In this document: positions 20,231 to 52,446 of the stretch, in pieces | Layout: every line of letters starts with the position of its first letter | How positions within the stretch are numbered: the stretch's first letter is position 1 | IMG/VR virus record: IMGVR_UViG_3300009177_000028 | Location: 140,388 to 204,387 of that record | Length of the DNA: 64,000 nucleotides | Reading direction: 5' to 3' (one strand) | The notes under the pieces: generated by a model | Databases searched by the model: none | What the model was told of the DNA's origin: nothing | Seen by the model: the letters and a program-made list of their open reading frames with translations, nothing else | Program-made: the position numbers and the translations under genes

Positions 20231-20265
20231 GTGGTATGAGTTATGCAATATGCAATCATGCCAAC
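20231..20265 (+). promoter_or_regulatory. repeated sigma54-type element, copy 1
   Basis: TGG-TATGAGTTAT-GC (GG-N10-GC) then AATATGCAATCATGCCAAC. Confidence 0.65.
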
Positions 20266-20380
20266 TACATCGTAATCAATGTAGGATAATCTCTTTTATT
20301 TATCTATACTGTGTGATGAATACTTTTTATTATTATCATTCATCACATGTAGTATATTTTTATTTATTAGAGGAATGTGG

Positions 20381-20415
20381 TTGGTATGCCGTTTGCAATA
20401 TGCAATCATGCCAAC
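20381..20415 (+). promoter_or_regulatory. repeated sigma54-type element, copy 2
   Basis: TTGG-TATGCCGTTT-GC; 26-bp perfect direct repeat with copy 1 (20244-20269 / 20394-20419). Confidence 0.65.
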
Positions 20416-20458
20416 TACAGGTAGGATAAGCAGCAGAAAGCCCCTGAAACCTGGGCGG

Positions 20459-20493
20459 TTGGCATGAAACCTGCAATTAGCAAGCGTGCCAAC
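20459..20493 (+). promoter_or_regulatory. repeated sigma54-type element, copy 3
   Basis: TTGG-CATGAAACCT-GC then AATTAGCAAGCGTGCCAAC. Confidence 0.7.
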
Positions 20494-20560
20494 TACCTGG
20501 GCGGGGCGAGTAGGAGGTCCACCTACCCCAAGCGGGCGCCTCTCTCGTGTGTCGAGCATG

Positions 20561-20644
20561 CCGCGCAACGGCCGATCGTGGCGCGCTAGTGGCGCGGTAG
20601 CGCAAGGATCGGCCGCTAGTGGCGCGGTACCGCGCAACGGCCGA
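20561..20644. repeat. GC-rich A-B-B-A direct repeat block
   Basis: CCGCGCAACGGCCGA at 20561 and 20630; CGCTAGTGGCGCGGTA at 20584 and 20614. Confidence 0.75.
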
Positions 20645-20915
20645 AAGCGCACTAGAAGAGCGCCTAGCGCGACCCTAGCCTATGACACCAAGATCATACC
20701 CCGGATGTAGTCAAAGGTCATGAGCTGTCGTTCAATGTTGCTCGAAAAAGGCTAATGGTTTCGTAGGGTAGACCTACATTATCCGCCAAAACTTTCGGAA
20801 TTCGTCATGGTAGTTTCTTTTCCTACATCGCAATTAGTTGCTGAATTCCGACCAACCAGGACACAAAGATCATTGTGGGATAAGATGCTACACCAATGAT
20901 ATCATATAGTTACAG

Positions 20916-20933
20916 TTGGCACCGACCCTGCAA
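20916..20933 (+). promoter_or_regulatory. sigma54-type promoter
   Basis: TTGGCACCGACCCTGCAA, GG-N10-GC, upstream of boxA and the long plus-strand gene run. Confidence 0.6.
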
Positions 20934-21032
20934 TGACCCCTAGACGCAACGGGAACGGATGAGAGCAGGGGTCACGCGGGCGGATCGCCCGCGCAGCCTG
21001 ACAGCGCACATGGTGCGCGCTGTCGCTCGATG

Positions 21033-21044
21033 TGGTCTTTGACA
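21033..21044 (+). promoter_or_regulatory. rrn-type boxA antitermination element
   Basis: TGGTCTTTGACA, 10/12 to E. coli boxA TGCTCTTTAACA. Confidence 0.5.
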
Positions 21045-21577
21045 ATCTAAACGTCTCACACGGGCGCCTCATGTGCGCCTACAGCGCGCGCCTAGCGCGT
21101 GTGCCTCCTACCTACGGTAAGGGACAGTGTGCGATAGCGGCGACCATATAGGTCCGCTCCTACCGCGTCCCACAATCACCGAGTAGCGCACACAACCGAA
21201 GCCACTGTGGGTTACATGCGGAAGATGTGTGGGCCAGGTGACCCGTCCTACATTCACTCCACACGGGAGACGATGTAGGCTACCCTCACCTAGTGTACGA
21301 ATCCCGAGGAGGGATAAACCGTAGGTAGGGCAATGTCCTGCTAGAGCCGACAATGTAGGCCGCGGTGAGGCGGTATGAGTCCGCAGCGTACGAATCAAGA
21401 GACTAAACGACTATGTGGGAGGGACGCCTAGAGTGTCCTTCCCCCGTAGCGTAAAGCCTACAAGGTAAGTAACTCTCTCCAAGTCTACGGTATTGGAGTA
21501 GGAGAGAACACCTTGTGAGCTTTACGCTGCGATCATCGCAGAGTGTCCCACAACAGCAGACAACAGGAGCCAACATC

Positions 21578-22150
21578 ATGAGCCAGACCACCAGCAACGA
21601 CAGCGCCGTCAAGTCGACCACCATCTCCTCCGATGTGGAGGAGCGTCTCACCGCCACCTTCAAGACCCTTCACCATCTCGTCTCCACCCACATGGTGAGT
21701 GCGGGTGCGAAGCTCACCTTCATGTCGGAGTTCGAGAAGTGTGGGATGGAGGACTACAAGGAGGTCGCGCATGCGGCACGGAAGCTGCTCGGCGCCAAGC
21801 GTCAGGAAAAGTGGGAGAACCGCATCAAGGGGATCCGTGCGGGGATCCAGGGTGTGGTCGACACCTACATGAACCGCAAACGTGCGGCCAAGGCGCAGTT
21901 CGACGCACTCCCGGAGGAGTTGCGCGCAGAAGGTGTGACCTTCAACCCCAACGTCTCCATCCCGGTGAAGGAGCTTGTGGGATGCTTCCCGCAGGGTGCG
22001 ACCCAGGAGCAGATCCTCCGAGACCTGAAGGATCTCTCCTACAACGTCATCCAGAATGCGGAAAAGGCGTACCTCATCCGCGTTGCCTTCGTTGCCGACA
22101 AGGTGGCAGACGAGGCGCCCAAGTCGGAGAAGACCGCCAAGGCGGCCTGA
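21578..22150 (+). CDS. hypothetical protein (first gene of the GC-rich run)
   Basis: AGGAG SD; strongly GC3-biased codons; ends KTAKAA. Confidence 0.85.
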   Translation: MSQTTSNDSAVKSTTISSDVEERLTATFKTLHHLVSTHMVSAGAKLTFMSEFEKCGMEDYKEVAHAARKLLGAKRQEKWENRIKGIRAGIQGVVDTYMNRKRAAKAQFDALPEELRAEGVTFNPNVSIPVKELVGCFPQGATQEQILRDLKDLSYNVIQNAEKAYLIRVAFVADKVADEAPKSEKTAKAA

Positions 22151-22173
22151 GCGCGCAGCGTTCCGCTGAGTCT

Positions 22174-22227
22174 CCTACATCCTGCTCCCAACTGCTCCCA
22201 TGTGGGGTGGTTGGGGGCAGTCGTAGG
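22174..22227 (+). ncRNA. intergenic hairpin family copy H1
   Basis: CCTAC-ATC-CTGCTCCCAAC...GTTGGGGGCAG-TC-GTAGG. Confidence 0.7.
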
Positions 22228-22252
22228 CGAGTCAACCACCAAGGAGGTTCAT

Positions 22253-22474
22253 GTGTTCCATACTCAGCCCAAGACCTACAAGAAGGTCTCTCTCCTCCAC
22301 AAGAACTACTTCGACCTACTCTGCGGCTCCAATGGCTACAGTAGGGAAGAGTACGACATCTGCGAGAAGGAAGACAATCTGGGGTTTCCTGTCTACACCG
22401 TGGACGTGTGGTCGCAAAGGTGCGACGACATGATGCAACGTGTGTTCAGCGAAGCCAACGGCTACAAGCGCTGA
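22253..22474 (+). CDS. hypothetical protein
   Basis: AAGGAGG SD then GTG 22253. Confidence 0.75.
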   Translation: MFHTQPKTYKKVSLLHKNYFDLLCGSNGYSREEYDICEKEDNLGFPVYTVDVWSQRCDDMMQRVFSEANGYKR

Positions 22475-22478
22475 TCTA

Positions 22479-22521
22479 CCTACACCATGCTCCCGAGGGT
22501 TACTTCGGGGGCATGAGTAGG
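22479..22521 (+). ncRNA. intergenic hairpin family copy H2
   Basis: CCTAC-ACC-ATGCTCCCGA...TCGGGGGCAT-GA-GTAGG (compensatory ATGC/GCAT). Confidence 0.72.
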
Positions 22522-22533
22522 AGGACCAGACAC

Positions 22534-22932
22534 ATGTACAAGTACGACGGACACTCCTTCAACATGTGCGAGGAGTGGTCGCAATGCCCACAACATCGAA
22601 CGGAGACCCACATGAAGGACAAGCTCGCTCAAGCGCCCGACCAGGTGCGACAGTTCGTACACGCTCTCATCTCCAACGCCAAAGAGGTGGAAGGGTGGGA
22701 AGTGTGCGACATGGAGGATGGCAAGTGCTTCGCTGACACCATAGCCCACATCGAGCACAAGGAAGACGGAAGGTGGGTGGTGTGCGACAACTACGAACGG
22801 TTCTTCTCTCTCATCTACACCTACACGGTGGCAGGCGAGTGGACCGTGCGCCGCATGTATGGCGAAGGTGGGGAGATGCCCTACAGCTTCGCCAAGTGTA
22901 TGGCGGATGCCTCCATCATGTTCACTGGCTGA
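22534..22932 (+). CDS. hypothetical protein
   Basis: AGGAGG SD; fills the space between H2 and H3. Confidence 0.75.
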   Translation: MYKYDGHSFNMCEEWSQCPQHRTETHMKDKLAQAPDQVRQFVHALISNAKEVEGWEVCDMEDGKCFADTIAHIEHKEDGRWVVCDNYERFFSLIYTYTVAGEWTVRRMYGEGGEMPYSFAKCMADASIMFTG

Positions 22933-22936
22933 TCCA

Positions 22937-22978
22937 CCTACGTCATGCCCTCATGTGTGTACATGGGGGCATTGGTAG
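22937..22978 (+). ncRNA. intergenic hairpin family copy H3
   Basis: CCTAC-GTC-ATGCCCTCATG...CATGGGGGCAT-TG-GTAG. Confidence 0.7.
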
Positions 22979-23019
22979 TGGGATTAGGCTCACTAACACC
23001 AAACAAGGGAGAATGTAAG

Positions 23020-23199
23020 ATGATCAAGTTCATTGTGGTTGTTCTGGCGTGCATCGGGGCATTCTTCGGTCTGGCGATTCTGTCGGGTCATGTCCCCCAG
23101 ATCTCCCACACCGCCTTCAACATCAGCACCTTTCAGGTCACGTGGTTGATGCTGGGCGTGTGTGCGACCGGGTTCGTCTCCTACAAGGTGTGCAAGTAA
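23020..23199 (+). CDS. small two-TM membrane protein, paralogue of 38068-38253
   Basis: MIKF...H.P...AF....WL..G.C...F..YK..K shared. Confidence 0.75.
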   Translation: MIKFIVVVLACIGAFFGLAILSGHVPQISHTAFNISTFQVTWLMLGVCATGFVSYKVCK

Positions 23200-23253
23200 A
23201 GGGTGCTGTAAGCGCCTAACGTACACATAACGTTACTCCAATCGAGGAAAACA

Positions 23254-23300
23254 GCGGCATATAGGCGCCTAGGTGGGTTCGACTCCCACATGCCGCCCTA
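23254..23300 (+). ncRNA. tRNA-like minihelix (acceptor stem plus T-arm)
   Basis: GCGGCAT/ATGCCGC 7-bp stem, TAGG-CG-CCTA mini-hairpin, GTGGG-TTCGACT-CCCAC T-arm. Confidence 0.5.
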
Positions 23301-23324
23301 AGTCATACATCAGCGGAGGATGTC

Positions 23325-23531
23325 ATGGTCAAGGTTACCAAGTGCCCCAATGTGGGTGATGCGGTCAAGATCGTCAAAGGCAAGAGGTCGGGTGATGTAG
23401 GCATCATCAAGCGATGTGCCTCGGTGTGGGGAGAGGACCGACTCAAGTGGTCGTCCTTCCTACTCGACATCAATGGTGAGGAAGTGTGGGTGCGTACGCA
23501 CCATGTGGAGAAACTGGAGAACGCGGCCTGA
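23325..23531 (+). CDS. KOW/SH3-like small protein
   Basis: VGDAVKIVKGKRSGDVGII KOW-like motif; ends ENAA. Confidence 0.6.
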   Translation: MVKVTKCPNVGDAVKIVKGKRSGDVGIIKRCASVWGEDRLKWSSFLLDINGEEVWVRTHHVEKLENAA

Positions 23532-23533
23532 CA

Positions 23534-23574
23534 CCCACACCCTGCTCCTAAGTAATCCTTGGGGGCAGAAGTGG
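23534..23574 (+). ncRNA. intergenic hairpin family copy H4
   Basis: CCCAC-ACC-CTGCTCC...GGGGGCAG-AA-GTGG (compensatory CCAC/GTGG). Confidence 0.7.
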
Positions 23575-23608
23575 TTGGCACGCTTGCATATAGCACAACG
23601 TATGCCAA
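23574..23608 (-). promoter_or_regulatory. repeated sigma54-type element, copy 4 (antisense)
   Basis: minus strand TTGG-CATACGTTGT-GC then TATATGCAAGCGTGCCAAC. Confidence 0.65.
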
Positions 23609-23620
23609 AGGAGGATTCCC

Positions 23621-24145
23621 ATGAAGATCAAGAGCCAGCGCACCACGACCTACACCGAGACCTACTCCCTCACCTTCGAGTACATCGGCTCCAATGGGAG
23701 CGGGTGTGCGTTCGACTGCGACAAGGAGGGAAAGGTCGACCTGACCAAGCTGCACCCGTGTGCGATTCTGACCTACACCGAAGCCAAGTTCGGACAGGTC
23801 ACCCGACGTGAGAACGTGCAGTACCGTGTGGGTGCAGATGGGGAATACGAGCCCATCCCCGGCACGGGTGAGATGGTCACCCGAGAGGTGAGCAAGGGTG
23901 AGGTCATCACCTACATCAACCGCCAGATCGTTCCTGCGGTGGGAGAGTGTGATTGTTGTGGGAGGGATGTCCACCTCTACGGTTTCACCAACACATGTGA
24001 GTGTGGGGCCGACTACAACATGTCGGGTCAGATGCTCGCTCCTCGTGAACAGTGGGGAGAGGAGACAGGTGAGACAGCCGCCGACATCCTCTCCTTCGAC
24101 TCCTACGATCGGGAGCCCATGGGCACCGATGAAGGATGGTTCTGA
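23621..24145 (+). CDS. hypothetical Cys-rich protein
   Basis: GGAGG SD; CDCC..C.C cluster. Confidence 0.8.
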   Translation: MKIKSQRTTTYTETYSLTFEYIGSNGSGCAFDCDKEGKVDLTKLHPCAILTYTEAKFGQVTRRENVQYRVGADGEYEPIPGTGEMVTREVSKGEVITYINRQIVPAVGECDCCGRDVHLYGFTNTCECGADYNMSGQMLAPREQWGEETGETAADILSFDSYDREPMGTDEGWF

Positions 24146-24161
24146 CAAAGTAGGAGTGCCG

Positions 24162-24203
24162 CCTACACCCTGCCTTCATGTGCAAGCATGAGGGTAGAAG
24201 TAG
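24162..24203 (+). ncRNA. intergenic hairpin family copy H5
   Basis: CCTAC-ACC-CTGCCTTCATG...CATGAGGGTAG-AA-GTAG (two G-U pairs on plus strand). Confidence 0.72.
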
Positions 24204-24237
24204 TTGGCATGCTTGCATGTAGCAGATTGTATGCCAA
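24203..24237 (-). promoter_or_regulatory. repeated sigma54-type element, copy 5 (antisense)
   Basis: minus strand TTGG-CATACAATCT-GC then TACATGCAAGCATGCCAAC. Confidence 0.65.
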
Positions 24238-24269
24238 TCGACCCCAAACACCCAAGGTAGGAGAGTGTC

Positions 24270-24830
24270 ATGAACTTCACGACCAAACCGGATACGTTCG
24301 TTCTCGTGGTGGCGGCCCTGTCGGATAAGCTGGTCCAGAAGGAGAACGAGTGTGTGGAGCTGCGAGACCACATCGCCTCCGACCATGCCAGCATGGACGA
24401 CATGCAGCGCACCATCACCGACCTGCGGGTCCAGTGTGAGCGACTGCAAGACAAGGCGGATGATGTGGACTACTTCCGCACTCGCTATCAGGACATGTCC
24501 CACAAGCTGGAGAACTACGAACACCTCCGCTCACAGAATGCCGAACTGTGGGAGCAGGTGCGAGTCCTGAAGATGGAGAACCACAAGCTCCGCTACGGTG
24601 GGCAGACTCCCGAGGAGACGGCCAACAACTACATGCTCTCCCAGGGGAGGCAGGTGTGGGAGCGTGGCAACAAGATTCAGTGCATCAAGGAGGTGCGAGA
24701 GGTGAGTGGATGGGGGCTGAAGGAAACCAAGGATTGGTGCGAAGCCTACATCGCCCGCCTGGATAACGAAAAGGAGGAGAGCGGCCCCGGTACCAAGCGC
24801 TCCTCCGGCAACGTAGCCAAAACTGGCTGA
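24270..24830 (+). CDS. coiled-coil protein with ribosomal bL12 (L7/L12) C-terminal-domain-like motif
   Basis: heptad-rich region then NKIQCIKEVREVSGWGLKETKDWCE. Confidence 0.65.
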   Translation: MNFTTKPDTFVLVVAALSDKLVQKENECVELRDHIASDHASMDDMQRTITDLRVQCERLQDKADDVDYFRTRYQDMSHKLENYEHLRSQNAELWEQVRVLKMENHKLRYGGQTPEETANNYMLSQGRQVWERGNKIQCIKEVREVSGWGLKETKDWCEAYIARLDNEKEESGPGTKRSSGNVAKTG

Positions 24831-24834
24831 CGCA

Positions 24835-24876
24835 CCTACACCCTGCCTCTATGTGTGAACATGGGGGCAGGAGTAG
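24835..24876 (+). ncRNA. intergenic hairpin family copy H6
   Basis: CCTAC-ACC-CTGCCTCTATG...CATGGGGGCAG-GA-GTAG. Confidence 0.72.
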
Positions 24877-24911
24877 CTGATTCAGACACAACACATGAAA
24901 GGAGAGAGGTC

Positions 24912-25037
24912 ATGAAGGTTCACAAGTCGCAGCGTGTGTTCCAAGAGGAGAAGAAGTATCCGGGTGTGGGTGCCCTCATCTGCGTCGGCTCTGGTCTCCT
25001 CTTTTGGGGGAGCTTGGCCTACCTCTTCGTTCACTGA
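24912..25037 (+). CDS. small membrane protein
   Basis: GAGG SD; C-terminal hydrophobic helix. Confidence 0.55.
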   Translation: MKVHKSQRVFQEEKKYPGVGALICVGSGLLFWGSLAYLFVH

Positions 25038-25057
25038 GGGAGTAGTGGGTCCAAGGG

Positions 25058-25092
25058 GTTGGCATGCTTGCATAGTGCAACATCCATGCCAC
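25058..25092 (-). promoter_or_regulatory. repeated sigma54-type element, copy 6 (antisense)
   Basis: minus strand GTGG-CATGGATGTT-GCA, canonical TTGCA -12 box. Confidence 0.7.
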
Positions 25093-25237
25093 AGCAGGCA
25101 TGTCGCCCCTACACCTACCTCAGAATACCTTCACCTATAATTCTTGTTGCACCTAACTTGAAACGTGCTAACTTATAATCTCGCCATTCTCGCAAGCCAA
25201 GGCCAAAACCTACATCGGCCCCATTAGGAGATAAGTC

Positions 25238-26131
25238 ATGAACGTGTATGAGATTGTCACCGAACGGATCATTGCAGCCCTGGAAAAGGGTGTCGTACCT
25301 TGGCGCATGCCCTGGCGTACCCAAGGTGGGAGCGGTCTCCCCAAGAACCTACAGAGTGGGAAGGAGTACCGAGGTGTCAACATCTTCCTACTGGGTGCGC
25401 AGGGGTACGCCTCTCCCTGGTGGGTTACCTACAAGCAGTGTACGGCCCGAGGTGGGCAGGTGCGCAAAGGTGAGAAGGGCACCCCGGTCATCTTCTGGAA
25501 GGTAGGAGATCATAAGACCAAGGTGGGCAAGAGTGGGAAACCGGAGAAGATGTTTATCCTCCGGTACTACACTGTCTTCAATGTCGCCCAGTGTGATGGG
25601 CTGGACTACCCCAAGGAGGCGGTGGTGGAAGCTCCCACCTTCGACCCCATCGAGCAATGCGAGAAGATCGTTCTCGCCTACAAGACCCTACCCAAGATTG
25701 AGCACGGAGGTGGGCGAGCCTGCTACTCCCCCTCCTTCGACAAGGTGATGATGCCGGAAAAGGAGAGCTTTGGTAAGAGGGAGGAATACTACTCCACACT
25801 CTTCCACGAGCTTACCCACAGCACCGGACATGAGAGCAGGTTGAACCGGGATGGGATCATGAATCCCATTCGGTTTGCCTCACATGACTACAGCTTTGAG
25901 GAGCTGGTAGCAGAATGTGGGGCGGCCTTTCTCTGCGCACATGCGGGTATCTTGGATACCACGCTGGACAACTCGGCCGCCTACATCTCCCACTGGGTGA
26001 GCAAGCTGAAGAGTGAGCCAAGGTGGATTGTGGAAGCCTCAAGTAAGGCAGCTAAGGCGGCTGACTACATCATGGGAGACCTGGTCAAAAAGGAGTCAGA
26101 GTCGGAGGAGTCAAGCGAGGAAGCCGCTTGA
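25238..26131 (+). CDS. ardC: ArdC-family ssDNA-binding antirestriction protein with zincin-like domain
   Basis: GVVPWRMPW, YRGVN, TYKQ..GGQVRKGEKG, YTVFNVAQ, TLFHELTHSTGH..RLNR, YSFEELVAE. Confidence 0.93.
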   Translation: MNVYEIVTERIIAALEKGVVPWRMPWRTQGGSGLPKNLQSGKEYRGVNIFLLGAQGYASPWWVTYKQCTARGGQVRKGEKGTPVIFWKVGDHKTKVGKSGKPEKMFILRYYTVFNVAQCDGLDYPKEAVVEAPTFDPIEQCEKIVLAYKTLPKIEHGGGRACYSPSFDKVMMPEKESFGKREEYYSTLFHELTHSTGHESRLNRDGIMNPIRFASHDYSFEELVAECGAAFLCAHAGILDTTLDNSAAYISHWVSKLKSEPRWIVEASSKAAKAADYIMGDLVKKESESEESSEEAA

Positions 26132-26218
26132 ACCGACATGTCAGGGACTGGGCTGGCCTACTCGGCTGGCTCAGTCTATTATCCTACATCCTCACACACA
26201 AGCCCTGAAAGGACGACC

Positions 26219-26638
26219 ATGAACGACAAGAGACCCTGGAATGAGGGAGGGGAGGAGAAGCCATATAGTGTCTCACTGTGGATACAGGATCCCTCCGACA
26301 TGAGTGACAATGACACATGTATGGCCGGGGAAGACTTCGCCACCGAAAAGGAAGCGCGAATGTGTCTGGCCGACATGAACGCACACTTCAATGACAGGTT
26401 CTACAAGGACGTACCTTATGTCCTGTTGGACGGCCCGAACGACCTACACGAGGTGACAGTGCGCACCCAAGCCCTCAAGCGGATGCAACGTGAGAGGGAG
26501 TGCGAGGACAGGGCGGCAAGGTCGGAGATGGCCATGCAAGCTGGGATGGGTATGGGCATTCATGCCTACAACGACATGATGGGATACGACTCTGAAGAGT
26601 ACGACCCTGACCTACACGGATACCTGCACGAAGACTGA
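26219..26638 (+). CDS. hypothetical protein
   Basis: AAAGGA SD; acidic. Confidence 0.75.
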   Translation: MNDKRPWNEGGEEKPYSVSLWIQDPSDMSDNDTCMAGEDFATEKEARMCLADMNAHFNDRFYKDVPYVLLDGPNDLHEVTVRTQALKRMQRERECEDRAARSEMAMQAGMGMGIHAYNDMMGYDSEEYDPDLHGYLHED

Positions 26639-26667
26639 GCAACCACAACAACCCGAAAGGTACGACC

Positions 26668-26886
26668 ATGAGCGACAACAACGGCAACAAGAGCGAAGGT
26701 AGCATCAAGACCGACAAGCGGAAGCAGTCTCTCTACTTTCCGGAGAGCATGCTCCAAGAGATCAAGGAGGAGGCGGCTCGGCTGGATCGTAGTCTGTCGT
26801 GGGTGGTTCAGCGTGCATGGAAGCTGGCACGCACCGAAGTCAAGAATCTGCCCAGCGTCTCCGACATCGAGACGGAGGACGAGTAA
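26668..26886 (+). CDS. MXAN_4361/MXAN_4362-family (TIGR04563-like) ribbon-helix-helix small protein
   Basis: DKRKQSLYFPESMLQEIKEEAARLDRSLSWVVQRAWKLAR matches the myxobacterial family as recalled. Confidence 0.88.
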   Translation: MSDNNGNKSEGSIKTDKRKQSLYFPESMLQEIKEEAARLDRSLSWVVQRAWKLARTEVKNLPSVSDIETEDE

Positions 26887-26894
26887 TCGTACCA

Positions 26895-26936
26895 CCTACA
26901 CCCTGCCCATTAGTGAGAGCTAGTGGGCAGGAGTAG
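26895..26936 (+). ncRNA. intergenic hairpin family copy H7
   Basis: CCTAC-ACC-CTGCCCATTAG...CTAGTGGGCAG-GA-GTAG. Confidence 0.72.
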
Positions 26937-26970
26937 TTGGCATGCTTGCATGTTGCACATCTCATGCCAC
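26936..26970 (-). promoter_or_regulatory. repeated sigma54-type element, copy 7 (antisense)
   Basis: minus strand GTGG-CATGAGATGT-GC then AACATGCAAGCATGCCAAC. Confidence 0.65.
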
Positions 26971-27004
26971 GGGGCGCCAGGCCCACACTCACCCACAATT
27001 CAGC

Positions 27005-27022
27005 GTGGCACATGACTTGCAT
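27005..27022 (+). promoter_or_regulatory. sigma54-type promoter (sense)
   Basis: GTGGCACATGACTTGCAT, canonical TGGCAC-N5-TTGC. Confidence 0.65.
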
Positions 27023-27079
27023 GTAATTGCATGGTCAATCAAAAGTGCTACAATTGATCAAAAGGAAAAGGAGGTTATC

Positions 27080-27313
27080 ATGTTTGGTATGAACAAGGCG
27101 CACATTGACACCGTCTATCAGCGAGAGGACGACATGTCCGACCTGATGCGCCGATGTCGGATGGCCCTCGACATGGGAGCCTCCAAGGAAGAAGTTCACG
27201 ACATCTGCATCCAAGCGGGTCAAAGTGAGGAACAAGCCTACTTGACCTACATCGCAGCCAAGCTGCTCACACGTGACGAAGCGTGCGAGACTGGCGCCCG
27301 AAAGGTGGCCTGA
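27080..27313 (+). CDS. hypothetical protein
   Basis: AAGGAGG SD, ATG 27080. Confidence 0.75.
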   Translation: MFGMNKAHIDTVYQREDDMSDLMRRCRMALDMGASKEEVHDICIQAGQSEEQAYLTYIAAKLLTRDEACETGARKVA

Positions 27314-27314
27314 C

Positions 27315-27791
27315 ATGTACTCCAAAGAGATCAAAGGTAGTTGGTTCGGCGTGACCATTCCCGAATGGTTGCGAGCCTTCGACTGTCGGTCCAGCGAGGA
27401 CGATATCGCACCTCGTACTCCCTGGGGCTCCTATCTCTGGTCAAGTGAGAGAGCTGCCGTGGACCTGGGCCTGCGTGCGGAAGGTGTCTACAACGACACT
27501 ACGCCCGTGGGCTGCTCCACCTACATCGATGCTCGTACGGCTCCTGAGTCGGAGTTGAAACGACAGGTGGAGAATATGGTGGCAGAGGCGACCAGACTTC
27601 GGGAGGAGTACCTAGAAGGGAAGAAGTTTCCCGATACTGAGGGACAAGGTGGGAGTTGTCTCTACATGCCGGTGGCTGTCTGCCTGAGTAACTTCGGGTG
27701 GTCGGTCCTGGCAGATCGGACCCAAGGAATCGTTCGCCGGTTTGGCTACAATGCCACACCCAAACGTACCAAGAAAGGAAGTGTGCGATGA
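27315..27791 (+). CDS. hypothetical protein
   Basis: abuts previous stop; ATGA overlap to next. Confidence 0.75.
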   Translation: MYSKEIKGSWFGVTIPEWLRAFDCRSSEDDIAPRTPWGSYLWSSERAAVDLGLRAEGVYNDTTPVGCSTYIDARTAPESELKRQVENMVAEATRLREEYLEGKKFPDTEGQGGSCLYMPVAVCLSNFGWSVLADRTQGIVRRFGYNATPKRTKKGSVR

Positions 27792-28390
27792 GCAAGTACA
27801 AGGGTGACGGGGCGTTGGAGCAGATCAACCCCGAGCGACTTACCTTGGGGTGTGTGGTGCGCATGCCCTACGGAAGTGGGGAAGTGCCTGCCTTTGGTGA
27901 CAGTGTCATCATCGGTATCCACGTCTCCTACTCTTCCAAGCGAACGAGTAAGGAGCGGTGCGATAAGCGCCACTACGAGACTCTCGCACAAGCTCTTACC
28001 CAAGCGCAGGATGGCGACTTCGTGGTGGTGAGTCTGGCTCGCCCCTACGTGTACGCCAACAACCCCTTCGTCTCTACACCGGGCTGGCTGGTCGGGTGCG
28101 AGAAGTACGAGGTGATGGGAGACCGCATCATCGACACCCACAAGGTGGTGGTTCAGAGCACGGGTGAGTATGCCACCTACAACATCAAACCTGCGCTCCA
28201 TTCGTGGGAGGTGGTGGTTGGCAACATCGGGAGCGTCTATCGCGACTTGTCGGAGAGCGCGGCCCGAGCCACCTACAAGGTGTACGTAGAGAACAGCAAG
28301 TGGCAGGGTGGACGTGCCAGTGGGGAAAGCGTCACTCTCTTCTGCGATGGTGAGATTGTGGAGGAGCATGTGGGGACGGTGGAAGGATGA
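27788..28390 (+). CDS. hypothetical protein
   Basis: coupled ORF, coding-like GC3. Confidence 0.75.
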   Translation: MSKYKGDGALEQINPERLTLGCVVRMPYGSGEVPAFGDSVIIGIHVSYSSKRTSKERCDKRHYETLAQALTQAQDGDFVVVSLARPYVYANNPFVSTPGWLVGCEKYEVMGDRIIDTHKVVVQSTGEYATYNIKPALHSWEVVVGNIGSVYRDLSESAARATYKVYVENSKWQGGRASGESVTLFCDGEIVEEHVGTVEG

Positions 28391-28629
28391 TTACATACCT
28401 CGACCCCAAACAAGTCATTGCCAAGCGCCAGACCACTCCTCCCCACAACCGGAGTCGCAGTGGGTATGGCAACAAGCTGCCTACATCCTGGGAGCTTCAA
28501 CTACAGGACAAGCGGTGGAGGCGGGTGTACGTGATTCAGTGGAGCAACGCTGGATCCGCCTACATCCTGGTCAAAGGTGAGAAGTTGTTCCTGGGTTCCT
28601 ACGAACCCTCCTATGAAGGGAAGGTGTGA
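28387..28629 (+). CDS. conserved phage-type hypothetical protein
   Basis: GYGNKLPT...RRVY..WSNAGSAY motif recalled from phage hypotheticals. Confidence 0.7.
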   Translation: MITYLDPKQVIAKRQTTPPHNRSRSGYGNKLPTSWELQLQDKRWRRVYVIQWSNAGSAYILVKGEKLFLGSYEPSYEGKV

Positions 28630-28630
28630 G

Positions 28631-29011
28631 ATGGGCTGGGATAAAGCATGCGGAGATGAGCAGTGTGAGGGATGTGACGCCACCCTGGAGGAAGGGGAGG
28701 ACATGTATGTCCAAGGGGACAGCGTGTACTGCGAAGGGTGCAACGAGGACCGCTTGGATGACGAAGCGGGTGAATGGGATGAATTGGACTACATGGACCG
28801 TGAAGGTGACTATCCCATCGATGGGGTAGGATTCGCGGACCCTGGTGGTCACTCGGCCCTACGTGCAGCTACACCCAACAACCCAAGGGACTGCGATTGT
28901 CCTACCTGTGGGGCGGAGGACGTTCTGACCCGCATCGACCGTCAACGTGGGTATCAGTGCGACAGGTGCGCTGATCGGGCGGAAGGTCGGAGCGGGTACG
29001 GAGACTACTGA
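28631..29011 (+). CDS. Zn-finger acidic protein
   Basis: several CxxC pairs (CEGC, CPTC, CDRC). Confidence 0.75.
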   Translation: MGWDKACGDEQCEGCDATLEEGEDMYVQGDSVYCEGCNEDRLDDEAGEWDELDYMDREGDYPIDGVGFADPGGHSALRAATPNNPRDCDCPTCGAEDVLTRIDRQRGYQCDRCADRAEGRSGYGDY

Positions 29012-29012
29012 C

Positions 29013-29330
29013 ATGAAGACACTGGTGCTGGTGGAGGATGATCTGATGCTTGCTAGCACCTTCATTCGGGTGTTGGGCAAAACTCACAACATCCTCCACT
29101 TCCTGACAGTCAAGGATGCCAGAGCACATCTGGCCTTGAATCCCACACCTGATGTCCTCCTCCTGGATCGTCAGGTGGGGTATGACAATGGGTGGGCGTT
29201 GCGGGAGGAGGTGGGTACGGGTGTCAGGGTGGTCCTGATGACGGGCGCTCCTCCCCAAGGCAATTCACTTACCTTCTTCCACAAGGGAGTAGATAACATA
29301 CAAAAACTTATCAGTATGGTAGAAGGCTAA
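29013..29330 (+). CDS. stand-alone receiver domain protein
   Basis: LVLVEDD, VLLLD, VLMTG, FHKG. Confidence 0.8.
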   Translation: MKTLVLVEDDLMLASTFIRVLGKTHNILHFLTVKDARAHLALNPTPDVLLLDRQVGYDNGWALREEVGTGVRVVLMTGAPPQGNSLTFFHKGVDNIQKLISMVEG

Positions 29331-29334
29331 ACTT

Positions 29335-29377
29335 CCTACACCCTGCCTATTAGAATTATCTAGTGGGCAGAAGTAGG
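29335..29377 (+). ncRNA. intergenic hairpin family copy H8
   Basis: CCTAC-ACC-CTGCCTATTAG...CTAGTGGGCAG-AA-GTAGG. Confidence 0.72.
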
Positions 29378-29421
29378 GGGATTCATCCTGAATCTTCTGA
29401 GACAAGGAAAGAGGAGAGCGC

Positions 29422-29976
29422 ATGAATAAGTTGGTGTATGCGGTAGTGGTTGCCTTGGCAGCGGTGGTGGGATGTGCAGCTCCGGTGGGAGACAAGTCGG
29501 AGCAGGTGGGACAGGTCAGTCAGGCGCTGGTTACCTTCGACCCTGCGACAGGGACGGGGTTTGTGGGGAAAGGTGATATCCAGCTTCCCTTCGGGTGGAA
29601 CAATGCCACCTTGCAGGCCAATGCAAGTTCGCTCACCTTCACCTACCAGAGCAGCGCCACCTACGAGGCGGTGTGCGAGTGGACCACCGGTGAAGGGACT
29701 CGTGGTCAACGGACCCACGATGTCACACACACCAAGACCAGTGTGGTCAACGACACCATCTCCTACGATGCTCGCACCCACAAGCAGGTGGACGGATTCT
29801 TCCTGACAGGGTACGGCAGTGTGACCGAAGGTGGGGAACCTGTTCCCGAGGTAGGAGGACCCTGCCCTGGCAACCCTGGAACGGATGGGGTGTGGGTCAG
29901 TGTGGTCCTGCTCAACTCCACGGGTGGGGGCTTGTGGGTGACCAACGCAGCGGGTGGGACGGCTCAGCTTCTGTAG
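29422..29976 (+). CDS. lipoprotein of unknown function
   Basis: lipobox LAAVVGC; FDPATGTGFVGKGDIQLPFGWNN motif recalled from bacterial secreted hypotheticals. Confidence 0.8.
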   Translation: MNKLVYAVVVALAAVVGCAAPVGDKSEQVGQVSQALVTFDPATGTGFVGKGDIQLPFGWNNATLQANASSLTFTYQSSATYEAVCEWTTGEGTRGQRTHDVTHTKTSVVNDTISYDARTHKQVDGFFLTGYGSVTEGGEPVPEVGGPCPGNPGTDGVWVSVVLLNSTGGGLWVTNAAGGTAQLL

Positions 29977-29984
29977 AGATACTT

Positions 29985-30058
29985 TCTACATCCTGCCGAT
30001 TATTCGTCTGGCTGATAAACTCGGTTTATTCGTCTGGCAGATAGTCGGCAGTAGTAGG
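29985..30058 (+). ncRNA. intergenic hairpin family copy H9 (extended)
   Basis: TCTAC-ATC-CTGCCGATTAT...ATAGTCGGCAG-TA-GTAGG; loop holds TATTCGTCTGGC twice (30001, 30027). Confidence 0.68.
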
Positions 30059-30304
30059 AGGTGTGTCATGTAATCGGCTAACTAACTTGTTTACCCGATA
30101 GTGTGGGAAACCCTGAGAGTGTGTCGCGACATTCAAGACATGGTGTATTGAATGGGCGCATGTGAGAATCCACGATACCCCAAGAGCTTTTGACGACAAT
30201 GTAGTTCTAAGTCTTCTATTACTCGCCTATAACCGAAACCTGCCGAAAGGGTGGGGAGTAGGTTATGGGCGCACATAGAGGGATTAGAAAGGAAAGGCAA
30301 GACC

Positions 30305-30769
30305 ATGCACGACATCAACGGCAAACCACTTCACATCGGCTCGGACATCTACTCTTCCCTACATGGACTCTGCAAGATCGTCGGTGTGCGAGAGGAGCAC
30401 AATCCCGACCAGGGAGGAGCTTGCATCGAGGTAAACTCCTACACTCGGGGTGGAGGTATCATCCTTCGCACTCACGAGCACAAGGTGACCAAGGTGCGTA
30501 CTTGGAAGGAGATGGCGGATGAATCCCTACGGGTGCAGGATGCCTGCAACCTGTCGGGAGTGGTCCACGCTTTCTCTACCATCATCACCGAGGTGCGCAC
30601 ACGGTTGGACAGTGAGGGCCAGGGTGGGACGGACAACGTCAACAACCATCCTGTCTGTCGTCTCTTCTCCGACAAGATTGCTTCCCTGACGGGTACGCAA
30701 TTCTGCAACGATGACGCACACCAAAACTTCTCCGATGCCTACAAGTGGGCACACGAGCAGAGCAAGTGA
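30305..30769 (+). CDS. hypothetical protein
   Basis: SD-like GGAAAGG; GTGA overlap to next. Confidence 0.75.
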   Translation: MHDINGKPLHIGSDIYSSLHGLCKIVGVREEHNPDQGGACIEVNSYTRGGGIILRTHEHKVTKVRTWKEMADESLRVQDACNLSGVVHAFSTIITEVRTRLDSEGQGGTDNVNNHPVCRLFSDKIASLTGTQFCNDDAHQNFSDAYKWAHEQSK

Positions 30770-30981: not shown

Positions 30982-31127
30982 TTACGCGCACTTAGGTGAG
31001 ACATTATCGGTATGGCGATAAGAATATCGCTATAGCGATAAAAAGTCTGTAACCACTTGGAACTACAGGGGAATGCGCGAACTAGGGCGCGAGAGTCGGA
31101 GGTGTAGGGCGGGCTGGGCCTGGGGTG

Positions 31128-31705: not shown

Positions 31706-31709
31706 TTGT

Positions 31710-50577: not shown

Positions 50578-50606
50578 TTGACAAGAAACCAATTGAGTGA
50601 TAGAGT
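50578..50606 (+). promoter_or_regulatory. sigma70-type promoter
   Basis: TTGACA-17 nt-TAGAGT with upstream TG. Confidence 0.65.
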
Positions 50607-50626
50607 TTGAATTGAAAGGGAGAATC

Positions 50627-50971
50627 ATGAAACACATCAATGCATTGTTTTCGTTCTCGGTAATGGCGGCTTCTCTGGTGGCAGCGGGCGGTAGCTATCT
50701 GATGCTGACCACTCCAATCAAGGCGGAGACTGCCAGGGTGGAGGCGCCCCATGCGCCTCCGGCCCCCATTCCTTCCGTGGAGGTTCCGCCTCCGGATCCG
50801 ATGATCCTGTCCGAGGTGGTCATTGCGGCCCCAAAGAATACGGTCAAGCCTGCACCGATTCGTGCTAAGGTGGCCCTCCCCAAACCGCCCACCCCCAAGC
50901 AGTTCCTCTGTGAGGAAAACTGGCAGGACAGTGCCATTGGAGGACGTTACAAGCGGTGTGATTGGAAGTAA
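50627..50971 (+). CDS. membrane-anchored Pro-rich protein
   Basis: N-terminal TM helix, Pro-rich stalk, C-terminal Cys pair. Confidence 0.7.
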   Translation: MKHINALFSFSVMAASLVAAGGSYLMLTTPIKAETARVEAPHAPPAPIPSVEVPPPDPMILSEVVIAAPKNTVKPAPIRAKVALPKPPTPKQFLCEENWQDSAIGGRYKRCDWK

Positions 50972-50982
50972 GGAGCAAGCCA

Positions 50983-51204
50983 ATGGCTGGCGCTACAAGA
51001 CATACCTACAAGCAAGAGTTGATCAAACAGATTACGCAGAGTTTCCGACGTTCCAGCTTGGTAGCTGTGCCGGAGTCATGCCTGCGAGATATGTCTACAT
51101 CTTCCCTTGCTGCATTCCAGGAGTGGTTGGAGCCTCTCCTCCGGGATAATCCATCTCTCACTCCAGCTTCACATAGGTTACCAAGTAAGAAAGGTAGGGA
51201 TTGA
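50983..51204 (+). CDS. hypothetical protein
   Basis: AAGGAG SD. Confidence 0.6.
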   Translation: MAGATRHTYKQELIKQITQSFRRSSLVAVPESCLRDMSTSSLAAFQEWLEPLLRDNPSLTPASHRLPSKKGRD

Positions 51205-51208
51205 ACGA

Positions 51209-51544
51209 ATGGACCGCGTAAATTTGGGAGAGCGTCTGCAACAGTGGCATTCATCGATGCACGATCCGGTTTATGCGGTCGGTTCGTTCTACTTTGCCGA
51301 CCAGGTGTATCCGAAGAAAGAGATTGTGGAGCATTGTATTCGCAATCTCAAAGAGGATATCCGGGACAAGAAAAAGATGCTGAAGGGCATCAAGGTTCGT
51401 CGCTACAACAGCTTCTACGGTAAGTGGATTGACGACCAGAAAAAGTTCGCTGGCTACACCAACGCACAATTGCGAACTGACATCAAAGACCTGGAAGACA
51501 TCGTGAAGGAAGTGGAGTGGTTCCTCCGGGAAGACTACAAGTAA
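51209..51544 (+). CDS. hypothetical protein
   Basis: WHSSMHDPVYAVGS motif. Confidence 0.65.
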   Translation: MDRVNLGERLQQWHSSMHDPVYAVGSFYFADQVYPKKEIVEHCIRNLKEDIRDKKKMLKGIKVRRYNSFYGKWIDDQKKFAGYTNAQLRTDIKDLEDIVKEVEWFLREDYK

Positions 51545-51714
51545 ATGTTGCTCGTCAAGATGACATTGAAGCAGGCCGAGATGTTGGGAATCGTCAAGTG
51601 TAAGCACTGCGGCTACCCACCCAACAACCACTTCACACACGGTAAAAAAGTGTGTGCTCATGCTCCATGTCCTGGTTATGAGCACTCTATCGTCTTACCA
51701 AAGGAGAACCACAA

Positions 51715-52026
51715 GTGAATCAGAAAGAACGTGAGAAGCGCTTGGCTTATGCTCGGAATCAATTCGAGATATCCAAGCTCCATGCAATGATGGCTTTTGC
51801 CGAGGCTACCACGGGAGTTGCCACCATGCGCGACACTGCGCAGGGAAGGGAGCCTACCGAAGAGGAAAGGGCCAAGGGAGTGACCATTGGTTGGAGACCT
51901 CATACCGACCAAGAGAAGATCAAGAACTCTCTGATGGTCATGCAGCGCCACATTCAATTCATGTCAGAACTGAACGACACCATCCACAAACTGATGAGTG
52001 ATGAGAATGAAAACGACGGCACATGA
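51715..52026 (+). CDS. hypothetical protein
   Basis: AAGGAG SD, GTG start. Confidence 0.7.
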   Translation: MNQKEREKRLAYARNQFEISKLHAMMAFAEATTGVATMRDTAQGREPTEEERAKGVTIGWRPHTDQEKIKNSLMVMQRHIQFMSELNDTIHKLMSDENENDGT

Positions 52027-52231
52027 GATCATCTCCAAGCTCAACTGCATGACAGAGCAGGAGCGAGAGCGAGTCCTTTGCGAATTGCTCAATCACTTCT
52101 GCGTGGCCTGTGGGCGAGCTGGAGACTGGCGAGAAGAGACCTGCGACTGTGATCCTTCCGAGGTTCGAGAGCAGGAGCCCGAAGCTATCCAATTGTGGCT
52201 GGTTTATCGGGGAGAGGAGAAGGCTGCCTAA
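51998..52231 (+). CDS. hypothetical protein
   Basis: FCVACG..CDC; ends EKAA. Confidence 0.6.
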   Translation: MMRMKTTAHEIISKLNCMTEQERERVLCELLNHFCVACGRAGDWREETCDCDPSEVREQEPEAIQLWLVYRGEEKAA

Positions 52232-52411
52232 TGGGATTCTTCGATTGGATTGCGAGTCTGTTCGAGCCTCCCCCGAGGTACAAACCACCTGGACGAGTCT
52301 GCCGGCAATGCGGCCGATCCTACCCACATTCGGATCAAGCTCGAATCTGTGAGGATTGGGACAAGGTGTTGGGGAAGGGGAGGCACGAGGCGGGGTGACC
52401 CGCCCGGTGTA

Positions 52412-52446
52412 GGTGGCATGCTTGCAATTAGCAATTTATAGACCGT
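52412..52446 (-). promoter_or_regulatory. repeated sigma54-type element, copy 9 (antisense)
   Basis: minus strand CGG-TCTATAAATT-GC then TAATTGCAAGCATGCCAC; -24 box degenerate, spacing kept. Confidence 0.55.

What the first reader, a model, noticed from the sequence alone, without database searches (positions are those of the whole stretch)
20231..52446. Nine copies of a ~35-bp element: a sigma54 promoter fused to an invariant half-site, six of them pointing antisense into the early genes
Seen: consensus TGG(C/T)A-N7-TGC-N5-GCA-N4-TGCCA(A/C) at 20231, 20381, 20459 (plus) and 23574, 24203, 25058, 26936, 31128, 52412 (minus). In all nine GG-N10-GC spacing is exact while the spacer varies freely, the signature of sigma54 -24/-12 selection. 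The distal arm GCAAGCATGCCAAC is almost invariant and has GG-N7-GC spacing, which sigma54 cannot use. Three minus copies (23574, 24203, 26936) abut an H-family hairpin. Knowledge: sigma54 holoenzyme forms stable closed complexes needing an enhancer-binding ATPase, and rpoN is reported essential in Myxococcus xanthus. Inference, alternatives: (a) activator-gated antisense promoters that shut off early genes; (b) sigma54 decoys or roadblocks; (c) promoter plus operator for a phage regulator; (d) less likely, 13-8-13 recombination sites. Sigma54-driven phage programmes are rarely described.
Basis: partly seen in the sequence, partly recalled or inferred. Interest (0 to 1): 0.85.

Follow-up and report, generated by a model that had tools for sequence, protein, structure and literature searches.

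The report
Lopsided mirrored sigma-54 phage promoters
Nine intergenic repeats in an uncultivated soil jumbo phage are sigma-54-type promoters, each fused to a mirror copy of itself that is 3 bp too short; they are a lopsided version of a face-to-face double sigma-54 site that is common in uncultivated phages and almost absent from bacterial genomes.

Summary
In detail: nine copies, against 0.01 expected by chance. One arm of every copy has exact GG-N10-GC spacing and a freely varying spacer. The other arm is nearly invariant with GG-N7-GC spacing.

The window is the last 64 kb of a 204-kb metagenomic jumbo-phage contig. Nothing points to Myxococcus.

Sigma-54-type sites are about 8-fold enriched in the window. 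Several plain ones sit in sense orientation just upstream of genes.

Eight related phages carry the same intergenic module, but there both arms are N10: two sigma-54 sites facing each other, with their -12 boxes 3 bp apart. The arm on the gene strand lies 45-200 nt upstream of the next gene, often right after a sense-strand RNA hairpin.

Only this phage has the deletion, and it has it in all nine copies.

Only four of the nine intact arms point at genes (three at the head of the arm, plus copy 52413). Five point antisense or into non-coding DNA.

No activator ATPase or phage sigma-54 gene was found. Whether the antisense arms fire, trap the polymerase or are silent is inferred, not shown.

The parts
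20232..20264 (+). Copy 1. N10 arm 20232-20247 points right (sense); N7 mirror arm 20251-20263 is on the - strand. First of the three-copy cluster at the head of the high-GC arm.
   Evidence: colinear with L145:1716 and L266:259
20382..20414 (+). Copy 2. The N10 arm points right. It is separated from copy 1 by an AT-rich stretch, 20265-20381.
20460..20492 (+). Copy 3. The N10 arm points right.
23575..23607 (-). Copy 4. The N10 arm points left (antisense). The N7 arm faces the next + gene (ATG 23621, with AAGGAGG just after the element). Abuts H hairpin 23534-23574.
24204..24236 (-). Copy 5. Antisense N10 arm. Abuts H hairpin 24162-24203. The next + gene starts at 24270.
25059..25091 (-). Copy 6. 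Antisense N10 arm, 146 nt upstream of the ArdC-like gene 25238-26131. Orthologous to N10/N10 elements upstream of ArdC in five relatives.
26937..26969 (-). Copy 7. Antisense N10 arm. Abuts H hairpin 26895-26936. A plain sense N10 site follows 37 nt later at 27006-27021.
31129..31161 (-). Copy 8. The N10 arm points left inside the gap 30982-31375, where no gene is called. A 16-bp perfect palindrome lies about 90 nt downstream of it.
52413..52445 (-). Copy 9, with a degenerate -24 (CGGTCT). The N10 arm is in sense for the leftward ORFs 52327-51959 and 51957-51676, after a terminator-like hairpin at about 52455-52495.
20917..20932 (+). Plain N10 site without a mirror arm. It is conserved with its upstream flank in relatives (L145:2309, L266:676, L269:2457, L267:5632). 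It heads a 616-nt highly structured RNA candidate.
27006..27021 (+). Plain N10 site (TGGCAC-N5-TTGCA) in sense, about 60 nt upstream of AAGGAGG plus ATG.
54752..54795 (+). Two tandem plain N10 sites in sense, upstream of the 526-538-aa primase/ATPase-like gene.
56417..56432 (+). Plain N10 site in sense, upstream of a short + ORF.
58515..58603 (-). Three sites on the - strand in tandem: two N7 (58591, 58563) and one N10 (58515). They lie in an 820-bp gap without called genes.
15455..15470 (-). Plain N10 site in sense, upstream of the histidine-kinase gene in the low-GC part.
22174..31754 (+). H hairpin family: about ten copies on the + strand, just after stop codons (22174, 22479, 22937, 23534, 24162, 24835, 26895, 29335, 29985, 31710). 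These are sense-RNA hairpins that precede the modules.

Best explanation
Each element is a regulatory module descended from a mirror-image double sigma-54 promoter. That ancestor has two -24/-12 sites on opposite strands, their -12 boxes 3 bp apart and predicted starts about 18 bp apart, pointing away from each other. It is the standard intergenic module of the high-GC terminal arm in this jumbo-phage family. It usually sits after a sense-strand RNA hairpin and before the next gene. In the window's phage one arm keeps canonical GG-N10-GC spacing and is the only arm that host sigma-54 RNA polymerase could use. The mirror arm has lost 3 bp in all nine copies. That arm covers about -9 to +8 of the surviving promoter and is held nearly constant. 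Each module is therefore one-directional: rightward and in sense for the three copies at the head of the arm, in sense for a leftward operon at 52413, and antisense or non-coding for the other five. Shown: the anatomy, the fit to the sigma-54 consensus, the enrichment, the homology with two-armed modules, and the uniqueness and uniformity of the 3-bp loss. Inferred: that host sigma-54 holoenzyme binds; that the intact arms fire when an activator acts (a host one or an unrecognised phage one); that the five antisense arms either compete with or interfere with rightward transcription between gene cassettes; and that the constant short arm serves as a shared operator or initial-transcribed sequence tying the nine sites to one control.
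For: Nine copies against 0.01 expected. Invariant GG/TGC with a free spacer. N10 core 17 against 2.0 expected in the window and 14 against 0.47 in relative L145; the spacing scan shows N10, the element's own N7 and N14 (an artefact of the element's internal geometry) as outliers. Plain N10 sites lie in sense upstream of ORFs. Sigma-70-like promoters are not enriched at 19.8-32.5 kb (4 against 6.6 expected). In relatives B-I nearly all composite modules are N10/N10 with a constant centre, they lie between + genes, and the sense arm is 45-200 nt upstream of starts. The orthologous element upstream of ArdC aligns with a 3-column gap in the window only. In 312 arms of mirrored sites from viral contigs, the positions my pattern left free reproduce the sigma-54 consensus (T before TGG 64%, Y 97%, R 95%, T before TGC 69%), and the centre gap varies from 1 to 4, which argues for two independent sites rather than a dimeric operator. 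The same 974 kb of viral loci hold 716 N10 cores against 22-61 for other spacings. The hairpins are sense-strand RNA structures. Between two strains 99.1% identical, the only difference inside an element falls in a spacer.
Against: No transcript or binding data exist, and the host, and hence its rpoN, is unknown. No enhancer-binding ATPase motif was found in the window or, by an exact-motif scan, in the contigs of this phage and its relative. No conserved upstream activator site is visible within 45 nt. Five of nine intact arms have no gene to transcribe. A dead arm would be expected to drift, yet the short arm is the best-conserved part. An identical 3-bp loss in all nine copies, against sporadic N8/N11/N12/N13 exceptions in relatives, points to selection or concerted evolution that this account does not explain. 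In E. coli, intragenic sigma-54 sites did not measurably affect the overlapping genes (PMC4591121).
Confidence: 0.5

Rival explanations
1. The short, constant arm is the working promoter. It would face the downstream genes in the internal copies and be read by a factor with a 3-bp shorter -24/-12 spacing: a phage-modified holoenzyme or an unrecognised phage protein. The N10 arm would then be the secondary partner.
For: The short arm occupies the place of the sense promoter of all relatives, after the hairpin and 34-180 nt before the next start. It is the most conserved part. The same deletion is present in all nine copies, and further N7 sites with other spacers stand in tandem at 58563 and 58591. 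Relatives also keep the sense arm constant, spacer included, in a lineage-specific way (ACTCT, GCTWT).
Against: No known sigma-54 tolerates altered spacing (established knowledge). No RpoN-box gene was found in the phage contig by an exact-motif scan. In the three-copy cluster and at 52413 the short arm points away from, or against, the nearest genes. N7 sites outside the elements number 4 against about 1.5 expected, which is weak.
Confidence: 0.15
2. The sites are sinks or occluders. They bind sigma-54 holoenzyme as stable closed complexes that never fire, and so draw sigma-54 away from host genes or block neighbouring promoters. Orientation would then be irrelevant.
For: No activator gene was found. 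Orientation is mixed. Mirrored double sites double binding capacity per length. They are strongly phage-specific (at least 120 viral loci against 17 bacterial ones) and often stand in dense tandem arrays at 43-70 bp spacing. Sigma-54 bound over another promoter can repress it (cited in PMC4591121).
Against: In relatives the sense arms are placed like ordinary promoters before genes. A sink does not need one arm disabled and kept constant. Roadblock repression by intragenic sigma-54 sites was not seen in E. coli.
Confidence: 0.15
3. The elements are binding sites of a phage DNA-binding protein unrelated to sigma-54: iterons of a replication origin, partition sites or operators. The three copies flanking the AT-rich stretch at 20265-20381 would be the origin.
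For: Direct repeats flank an AT-rich segment with further repeats at 19.9-20.5 kb. Other copies are dispersed in either orientation. One arm is constant.
Against: The unconstrained positions match the sigma-54 consensus and only GG/TGC are kept in the variable arm. The centre gap varies across the wider class, which a dimeric protein would not tolerate. Plain single N10 sites lie in sense before genes.
Confidence: 0.1
4. The elements are chiefly recombination substrates. Hairpin-plus-promoter cassettes would shuffle small genes, as PeSL motifs do in T4-type phages, and the constant arm would simply be the part homogenised by exchange.
For: The order gene - hairpin - module - gene recurs in this phage and its relatives. 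Gene content between modules differs among relatives while the modules stay. The constant arm differs by lineage. PeSL precedent: PMC2839356, PMC4122927.
Against: Homogenisation alone does not explain why GG and GC of the variable arm are kept at exact spacing. This reading is compatible with, rather than an alternative to, promoter function.
Confidence: 0.05

Closest known systems
Sigma-54 (RpoN) -24/-12 promoters of bacteria
   Same: GG and GC exactly 10 bp apart. Extended match TGGCAY(R)-N4-(T)TGCW. Spacer free to vary. Some copies lie in sense before genes.
   Different: Here the site is fused to a mirror arm. No upstream activator site or activator gene was seen. Five of nine have no gene downstream. 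The host and its rpoN are unknown.
Intragenic and antisense sigma-54 binding sites of E. coli (PMC4591121)
   Same: Sigma-54-type sites that are conserved only at the contact positions, lie away from gene starts or in antisense, and are mostly silent as closed complexes.
   Different: Those are single sites inside genes of a cell. These are intergenic, repeated, paired with a mirror arm, and sit in a phage.
Symmetric bidirectional sigma-70 promoters (10.1101/2020.01.31.928960; PMC12825309)
   Same: Promoter elements on opposite strands overlap. RNA polymerase can bind in either orientation, and one binding excludes the other. The predicted divergent starts of the N10/N10 form are about 18 bp apart, the commonest distance reported for sigma-70.
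   Different: There the overlap comes from the near-symmetry of the -10 hexamer. Here two complete 16-bp sigma-54 sites are juxtaposed, and in the window one has been disabled.
PeSL promoter-terminator cassettes of T4-type phages (PMC2839356, PMC4122927)
   Same: A stem-loop plus a promoter is repeated between small, variable early-type genes.
   Different: PeSLs carry sigma-70 early promoters, all in sense. Here the promoters are of the sigma-54 type and two-armed.
Sigma-54-like promoter of Pseudomonas phage YuA (PMC10914365, citing Ceyssens 2008)
   Same: A phage with a promoter assigned to host sigma-54.
   Different: YuA has one such promoter (P015) reported in that study. No mirrored arms, no arrays and no family-wide use are described.
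Lambda antisense promoters (paQ, pRE; oop RNA), from my own knowledge
   Same: Promoters inside or just after genes that fire against the sense transcript to damp it.
   Different: Those are sigma-70 promoters, CII-activated or constitutive, and each is unique. They are not a repeated module.

Membership tests
Sigma-54-dependent promoter | GG at -24 and GC at -12 with exactly 10 bp between them | tested here: met
   9 of 9 copies on the matched strand. N10 is a clear outlier among spacings.
Sigma-54-dependent promoter | Extended consensus YTGGCACGr-N3-TTGCW | tested here: met
   TGGCAT/TGGTAT/TGGCAC in 8 of 9 copies. TGC followed by A or T in 9 of 9. T before TGC in 4 of 9. Copy 52413 has a weak -24.
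Sigma-54-dependent promoter | Lies upstream of, and in sense with, a gene or RNA it transcribes | tested here: inconclusive
   Met for 20232, 20382, 20460 and 52413. Not met for 23575, 24204, 25059, 26937 and 31129.
Sigma-54-dependent promoter | An enhancer-binding AAA+ activator and its upstream binding site | tested here: not met
   No GAFTGA-type motif in six frames of the window. Neither this contig nor the contig of relative B is among the 49 viral contigs with ELFGH-x2-GAFTGA. No shared sequence within 45 nt upstream. A host activator cannot be excluded.
Sigma-54-dependent promoter | The host encodes rpoN; holoenzyme binds; the start lies about 12 nt past GC | not testable with these tools
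   The host is unknown, there is no cultured relative, and no transcript data are available.
Mirror-image double sigma-54 site (class defined here) | Two N10 sites on opposite strands, -12 boxes 1-4 nt apart | tested here: not met
   The second arm is N7 in all nine copies. Relatives B-I meet it. The window's form is a derived member, shown by the 3-column gap in alignment A2.
Mirror-image double sigma-54 site (class defined here) | Homology of position and flanks with two-armed modules of relatives | tested here: met
   The element upstream of ArdC is syntenic in A, B, C, D, F and G. The head cluster is colinear with L145:1716 and L266:259.
PeSL-like promoter/stem-loop cassette | Stem-loop directly followed by a promoter, repeated between small variable genes | tested here: met
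   3 of 9 copies abut an H hairpin. The same order is seen in relatives.
PeSL-like promoter/stem-loop cassette | Breakpoints of gene gain or loss coincide with the motifs | not tested
   Only partial loci of relatives were held. Gene content differs between them, but breakpoints were not mapped.
Sigma-70 promoter on the gene strand | TTGACA-like box, 16-18 bp spacer, TATAAT-like box with A at position 2 and T at position 6 | tested here: not met
   TTGGCA is present, but the hexamer 16-18 bp downstream lacks the conserved A (read directly from the copies). The scan finds no excess of such promoters.

The most novel reading that the evidence does not exclude
Mirror-image double sigma-54 sites are a phage-specific device, used by many uncultivated phages including jumbo phages, to capture host sigma-54 polymerase without carrying an activator gene. 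In this phage a whole promoter set has shifted to a -24/-12 spacing 3 bp shorter than any known sigma-54 accepts. That would imply a phage factor that re-tunes or replaces sigma-54 recognition.
Probability: 0.15. Interest if true: 0.9.

Novelty: new variant of a known kind. Interest (0 to 1): 0.72.

Why it matters
Phage use of sigma-54 is barely documented. The only case my eight literature searches turned up was a sigma-54-like promoter in Pseudomonas phage YuA. They found no description of paired, face-to-face sigma-54 sites.

Here such sites are the standard intergenic signal of a jumbo-phage family.

If host sigma-54 polymerase binds them, two questions follow. How do phages that carry no recognisable activator fire a polymerase form that is otherwise locked until an ATPase opens it? 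And why do they keep a second site facing the first?

The window's phage is a natural experiment: one arm of every module is disabled by the same 3-bp loss. That makes direction, competition between orientations and the role of the constant arm directly testable with short synthetic DNAs and purified components.

Tried and rejected
- **Stop-codon reassignment** as the cause of the short ORFs. Dropping TAG, TGA or TAA gave no coherent long frames.
- **Prophage or ICE in a low-GC chromosome.** The 140 kb to the left look like jumbo-phage genes (ThyX, dUTPase, IMPDH-like, many unknowns). The GC step is crossed by three independent assemblies and recurs in relatives.
- **A sigma-70 promoter on the gene strand.** No conserved -10 box.
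- **Leaderless mRNAs.** The predicted +1 is the A of a conserved ATG, but the ORFs are about 5 to 74 codons long and unrelated (read).
- **Cruciform or RNA hairpin of the whole element.** The outer 6-7 bp can pair, but the spacers are not complementary.
- **A phage activator or phage sigma-54.** Motif scans found none in the contigs of this phage or relative B. These were exact-motif scans and would miss divergent forms.
- **Known RNA families.** None found.
- **tRNAs or att sites.** No tRNA genes were found; att sites were not searched for specifically.
- **A cultured relative or host.** None closer than about 30-40% protein identity.
- **Gene-orientation statistics around mirrored sites in other phages.** Done with crude ORF calls; no clear preference.
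- **A general rule that one arm is constant in other phages.** Suggestive in a few, not robust.
No significant DNA-binding family.
- Two look-ups of closer relatives returned no DNA, and one protein was not on record.

Full report
**Observation**

Three are on the + strand, at 20232, 20382 and 20460. Six are on the - strand, at 23575, 24204, 25059, 26937, 31129 and 52413.

In the alignment of the nine the invariant columns are the GG, the TGC ten bases further on, and a block GCAA.C.TGCCA.C. The bases between GG and TGC differ in nearly every copy. Read on the opposite strand, the constant block is TGGCA-N4-TGC, i.e. GG-N7-GC, in all nine. Three - copies abut a hairpin family beginning CCTACACCCTGCC. 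The description is therefore accurate.

**Where the window comes from**

The window is positions 140388-204387, the last 64 kb, of a 204,387-bp soil-metagenome contig that is also in IMG/VR.

- The first ~14 kb of the window have 39% GC, and the 10 kb of contig fetched to their left carry jumbo-phage-type genes: ThyX, dUTPase, an IMPDH-like gene, a release-factor gene and many unknowns.
- From about 20 kb to the contig end the GC is 52-57%, and almost all genes are small and on the + strand.
- The junction is not an assembly artefact. Two other metagenome assemblies cross it at 99.1% and 99.99% identity, and two relatives show the same GC step.
- There is no close cultured relative and no evidence on the host.

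**Is the variable-spacer arm a sigma-54 site?**

The bare core TGGYA-N7-TGCW occurs 17 times, against 2.0 expected. A scan of spacings from GG-N5-GC to GG-N14-GC in the high-GC arm shows excess at N10 (14 against 1.6) and N7 (13 against 1.5). N14 also rises (8 against 1.9), a by-product of the element's own geometry.

The nine N10 sites outside the elements include textbook matches in sense orientation shortly before ORFs:

- 27006 (TGGCAC-N5-TTGCA, about 60 nt before AAGGAGG plus ATG);
- a tandem pair at 54752 and 54780, before the 526-538-aa primase/ATPase-like gene;
- 56417;
- 15455, before the histidine-kinase gene.

Sigma-70-like promoters are not enriched at 19.8-32.5 kb (4 against 6.6 expected).

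**Relatives change the picture**

An ArdC-like protein (25238-26131) led to eight related phages at 68-80% identity, or sharing the neighbouring C39 peptidase at 62-64%. They are L145 (B), L267 (C), L269 (D), L268 (E), L266 (F), L342 (G), L263 (H) and L339 (I).

In L145 the N10 core occurs 14 times in 11.5 kb, against 0.47 expected. In all eight the intergenic module has two arms, both with GG-N10-GC, facing each other with a constant centre. The few exceptions have N8, N11, N12 or N13 in single copies, mostly in the head cluster.

Where gene calls were available (C, D, F), the arm on the gene strand lies between + genes, 45-200 nt before the next start. It often follows a hairpin of the same H family. 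In B, C and D that arm is constant, spacer included, in a lineage-specific way (ACTCT in B and C, GCTWT in D). The opposite arm keeps only GG and TTGC while everything else varies.

The module upstream of ArdC is syntenic in A, B, C, D, F and G. Its alignment shows a three-column gap in the window's gene-strand arm and nowhere else. Only this phage has that state, and it has it in all nine copies.

**A wider class**

- In 312 arms from these sites, the positions my pattern left free reproduce the sigma-54 consensus: T before TGG 64%, pyrimidine then purine after TGGCA 97% and 95%, T before TGC 69%. The centre gap varies, giving total lengths of 33-36. That pattern fits two independent sigma-54-type sites better than an operator for a dimeric protein.
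- The same 974 kb hold 716 N10 cores, 380 of them outside the palindromes, against 22-61 for other spacings.
- A stricter pattern, expected about 0.5 times by chance in 596 Gb (my estimate), found 17 loci in the complete scan of bacterial and archaeal genomes. Most are short MAG contigs, and two actinobacterial hits are perfect palindromes of another kind.
- The carriers include contigs of 128-480 kb as well as podovirus-like contigs with T7-type primase-helicase genes or large-terminase and portal genes.
- Eight literature searches found no description of such paired sites. The nearest items are a sigma-54-like promoter in phage YuA, intragenic and antisense sigma-54 sites in E. coli, symmetric bidirectional sigma-70 promoters and PeSL cassettes.

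**Geometry**

In a 35-bp N10/N10 module, taking the start as 12 nt past the C of GC, the two predicted starts lie 18 bp apart and point away from each other. Each promoter's recognition elements lie in the other's first transcribed bases, so binding in one orientation must exclude the other (inference from the sequence). Eighteen bp is also the commonest separation in symmetric sigma-70 promoters.

**Orientation in the window**

The three head copies have the intact arm pointing right. They face a conserved plain N10 site at 20917, a 616-nt stretch that folds far better than shuffles (z = -7.1) and then the + genes.

Copy 52413 follows a terminator-like hairpin and precedes a tightly packed leftward ORF run.

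Copies 23575, 24204, 25059 and 26937 lie between + genes with the intact arm pointing backwards. Copy 31129 sits in a gene-free gap.

The H hairpins fold better as + strand RNA in 21 of 23 cases (summed -536 against -444 kcal/mol). They therefore belong to the sense transcripts.

**What I could not find**

- The window has no GAFTGA-type activator in any frame.
- Exact-motif scans of IMG/VR for the activator signature and for the RpoN box returned 49 and 6 contigs, but not this contig or B's. Divergent forms would be missed.
- The arm does encode two stand-alone receiver-domain proteins, and the body encodes a histidine kinase preceded by an N10 site. A link to host NtrC-type activators is conceivable but untested.

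**Verdict on mechanism**

I commit to the following, at confidence about 0.5. The elements are sigma-54-type promoter modules derived from mirrored double promoters. In this phage they are one-directional because of a fixed 3-bp loss. The short arm is retained as shared downstream or operator sequence.

The uniform loss and the strong conservation of the short arm are not explained by simple decay. They leave room for a working short-spaced promoter read by an altered factor (0.15). A pure sink or occluder role (0.15), a non-sigma-54 DNA-binding protein (0.1) and a mainly recombinational role (0.05) remain possible.

Sense and antisense copies share the same putative control sequence, and the family's primary design is a sense promoter. 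Options (b) and (c) survive as parts of the picture. Option (d) is unlikely as stated.

Noticed in passing
window 1-64000; junction near 20000-20200: The contig has two compositions: about 39% GC in the body (and in the stretch sampled to the left) and 52-57% GC in a 44-kb terminal arm of small + strand genes. Three assemblies cross the step, and relatives L267 and L269 show the same step.
   Followed up: partly
window 63300-64000 and L138-L140: Contigs from three different assemblies all stop within about 0.5 kb of the window end. This suggests a physical genome end or a repeat there.
   Followed up: no
window 20945-21560 (+): A 616-nt non-coding stretch downstream of the conserved plain sigma-54-type site at 20917 folds much better than shuffles (z = -7.1). 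It is full of GC-rich inverted repeats and has no Rfam match. It may be a long structured leader or a non-coding RNA.
   Followed up: partly
window 22174-31754 (+) and relatives: The H hairpin family (CCTACACCCTGCC ... GGGCAGGAGTAGG) has 12-17-bp stems and 4-nt loops and lies directly after stop codons. It is conserved in sequence across relatives and more stable on the + strand. There is no U tract, so these are probably processing or stabilising hairpins rather than classical terminators.
   Followed up: partly
window 14242-15459 (-), 34676-35062 (+), about 36072-36416 (+): The phage carries a histidine kinase (PAS-like, HisKA, HATPase) preceded by a sigma-54-type site, and two stand-alone receiver-domain proteins in the high-GC arm. 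Relatives also carry receiver-only genes.
   Followed up: no
window 6629-7726 (+): A full-length class-I peptide-chain release-factor gene (PCRF plus RF-1 domains) lies in the phage body. A simple test gave no sign of stop-codon reassignment.
   Followed up: partly
window 9017-12687 and 15939-17369 (+): There are runs of head-to-tail ORFs of 110-138 codons with overlapping stop and start codons. They may be paralogue arrays.
   Followed up: no
window 31025-31040 and the next ~25 bp: A perfect 16-bp palindrome (TATCGCTATAGCGATA) is followed by a near-repeat, in the gene-free gap that holds copy 8. It is a candidate operator for a different regulator.
   Followed up: no
window 24270-24830 and about 61091-61414; relatives L267, L269: Small proteins have a weak match to the C-terminal domain of ribosomal protein L7/L12. 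They recur in the arm of this phage and of its relatives.
   Followed up: no
window 58563-58603 (-): Two further GG-N7-GC sites, with spacers unlike the nine elements, stand in tandem just upstream of an N10 site, inside an 820-bp gap without called genes.
   Followed up: partly
window 17775-19852 (-) and relatives: A leftward operon of three peptidase genes (C39, trypsin-like, zinc metallopeptidase-like) borders the head cluster. It is conserved in relatives, including distant ones (L155, L214).
   Followed up: no
L339 (genome contigs): A 3.6-kb contig binned into a Sediminibacterium MAG carries the family's C39 peptidase and mirrored sites. This is a weak host hint. The strong Shine-Dalgarno use in the arm argues against a Bacteroidota host.
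   Followed up: no
window 20001-64000 (+): Words containing CCTAC are much commoner on the + strand than their complements (ACCTACA 30 against 10). The outer flank of many -24 boxes in the family is GTAG.
   Followed up: no
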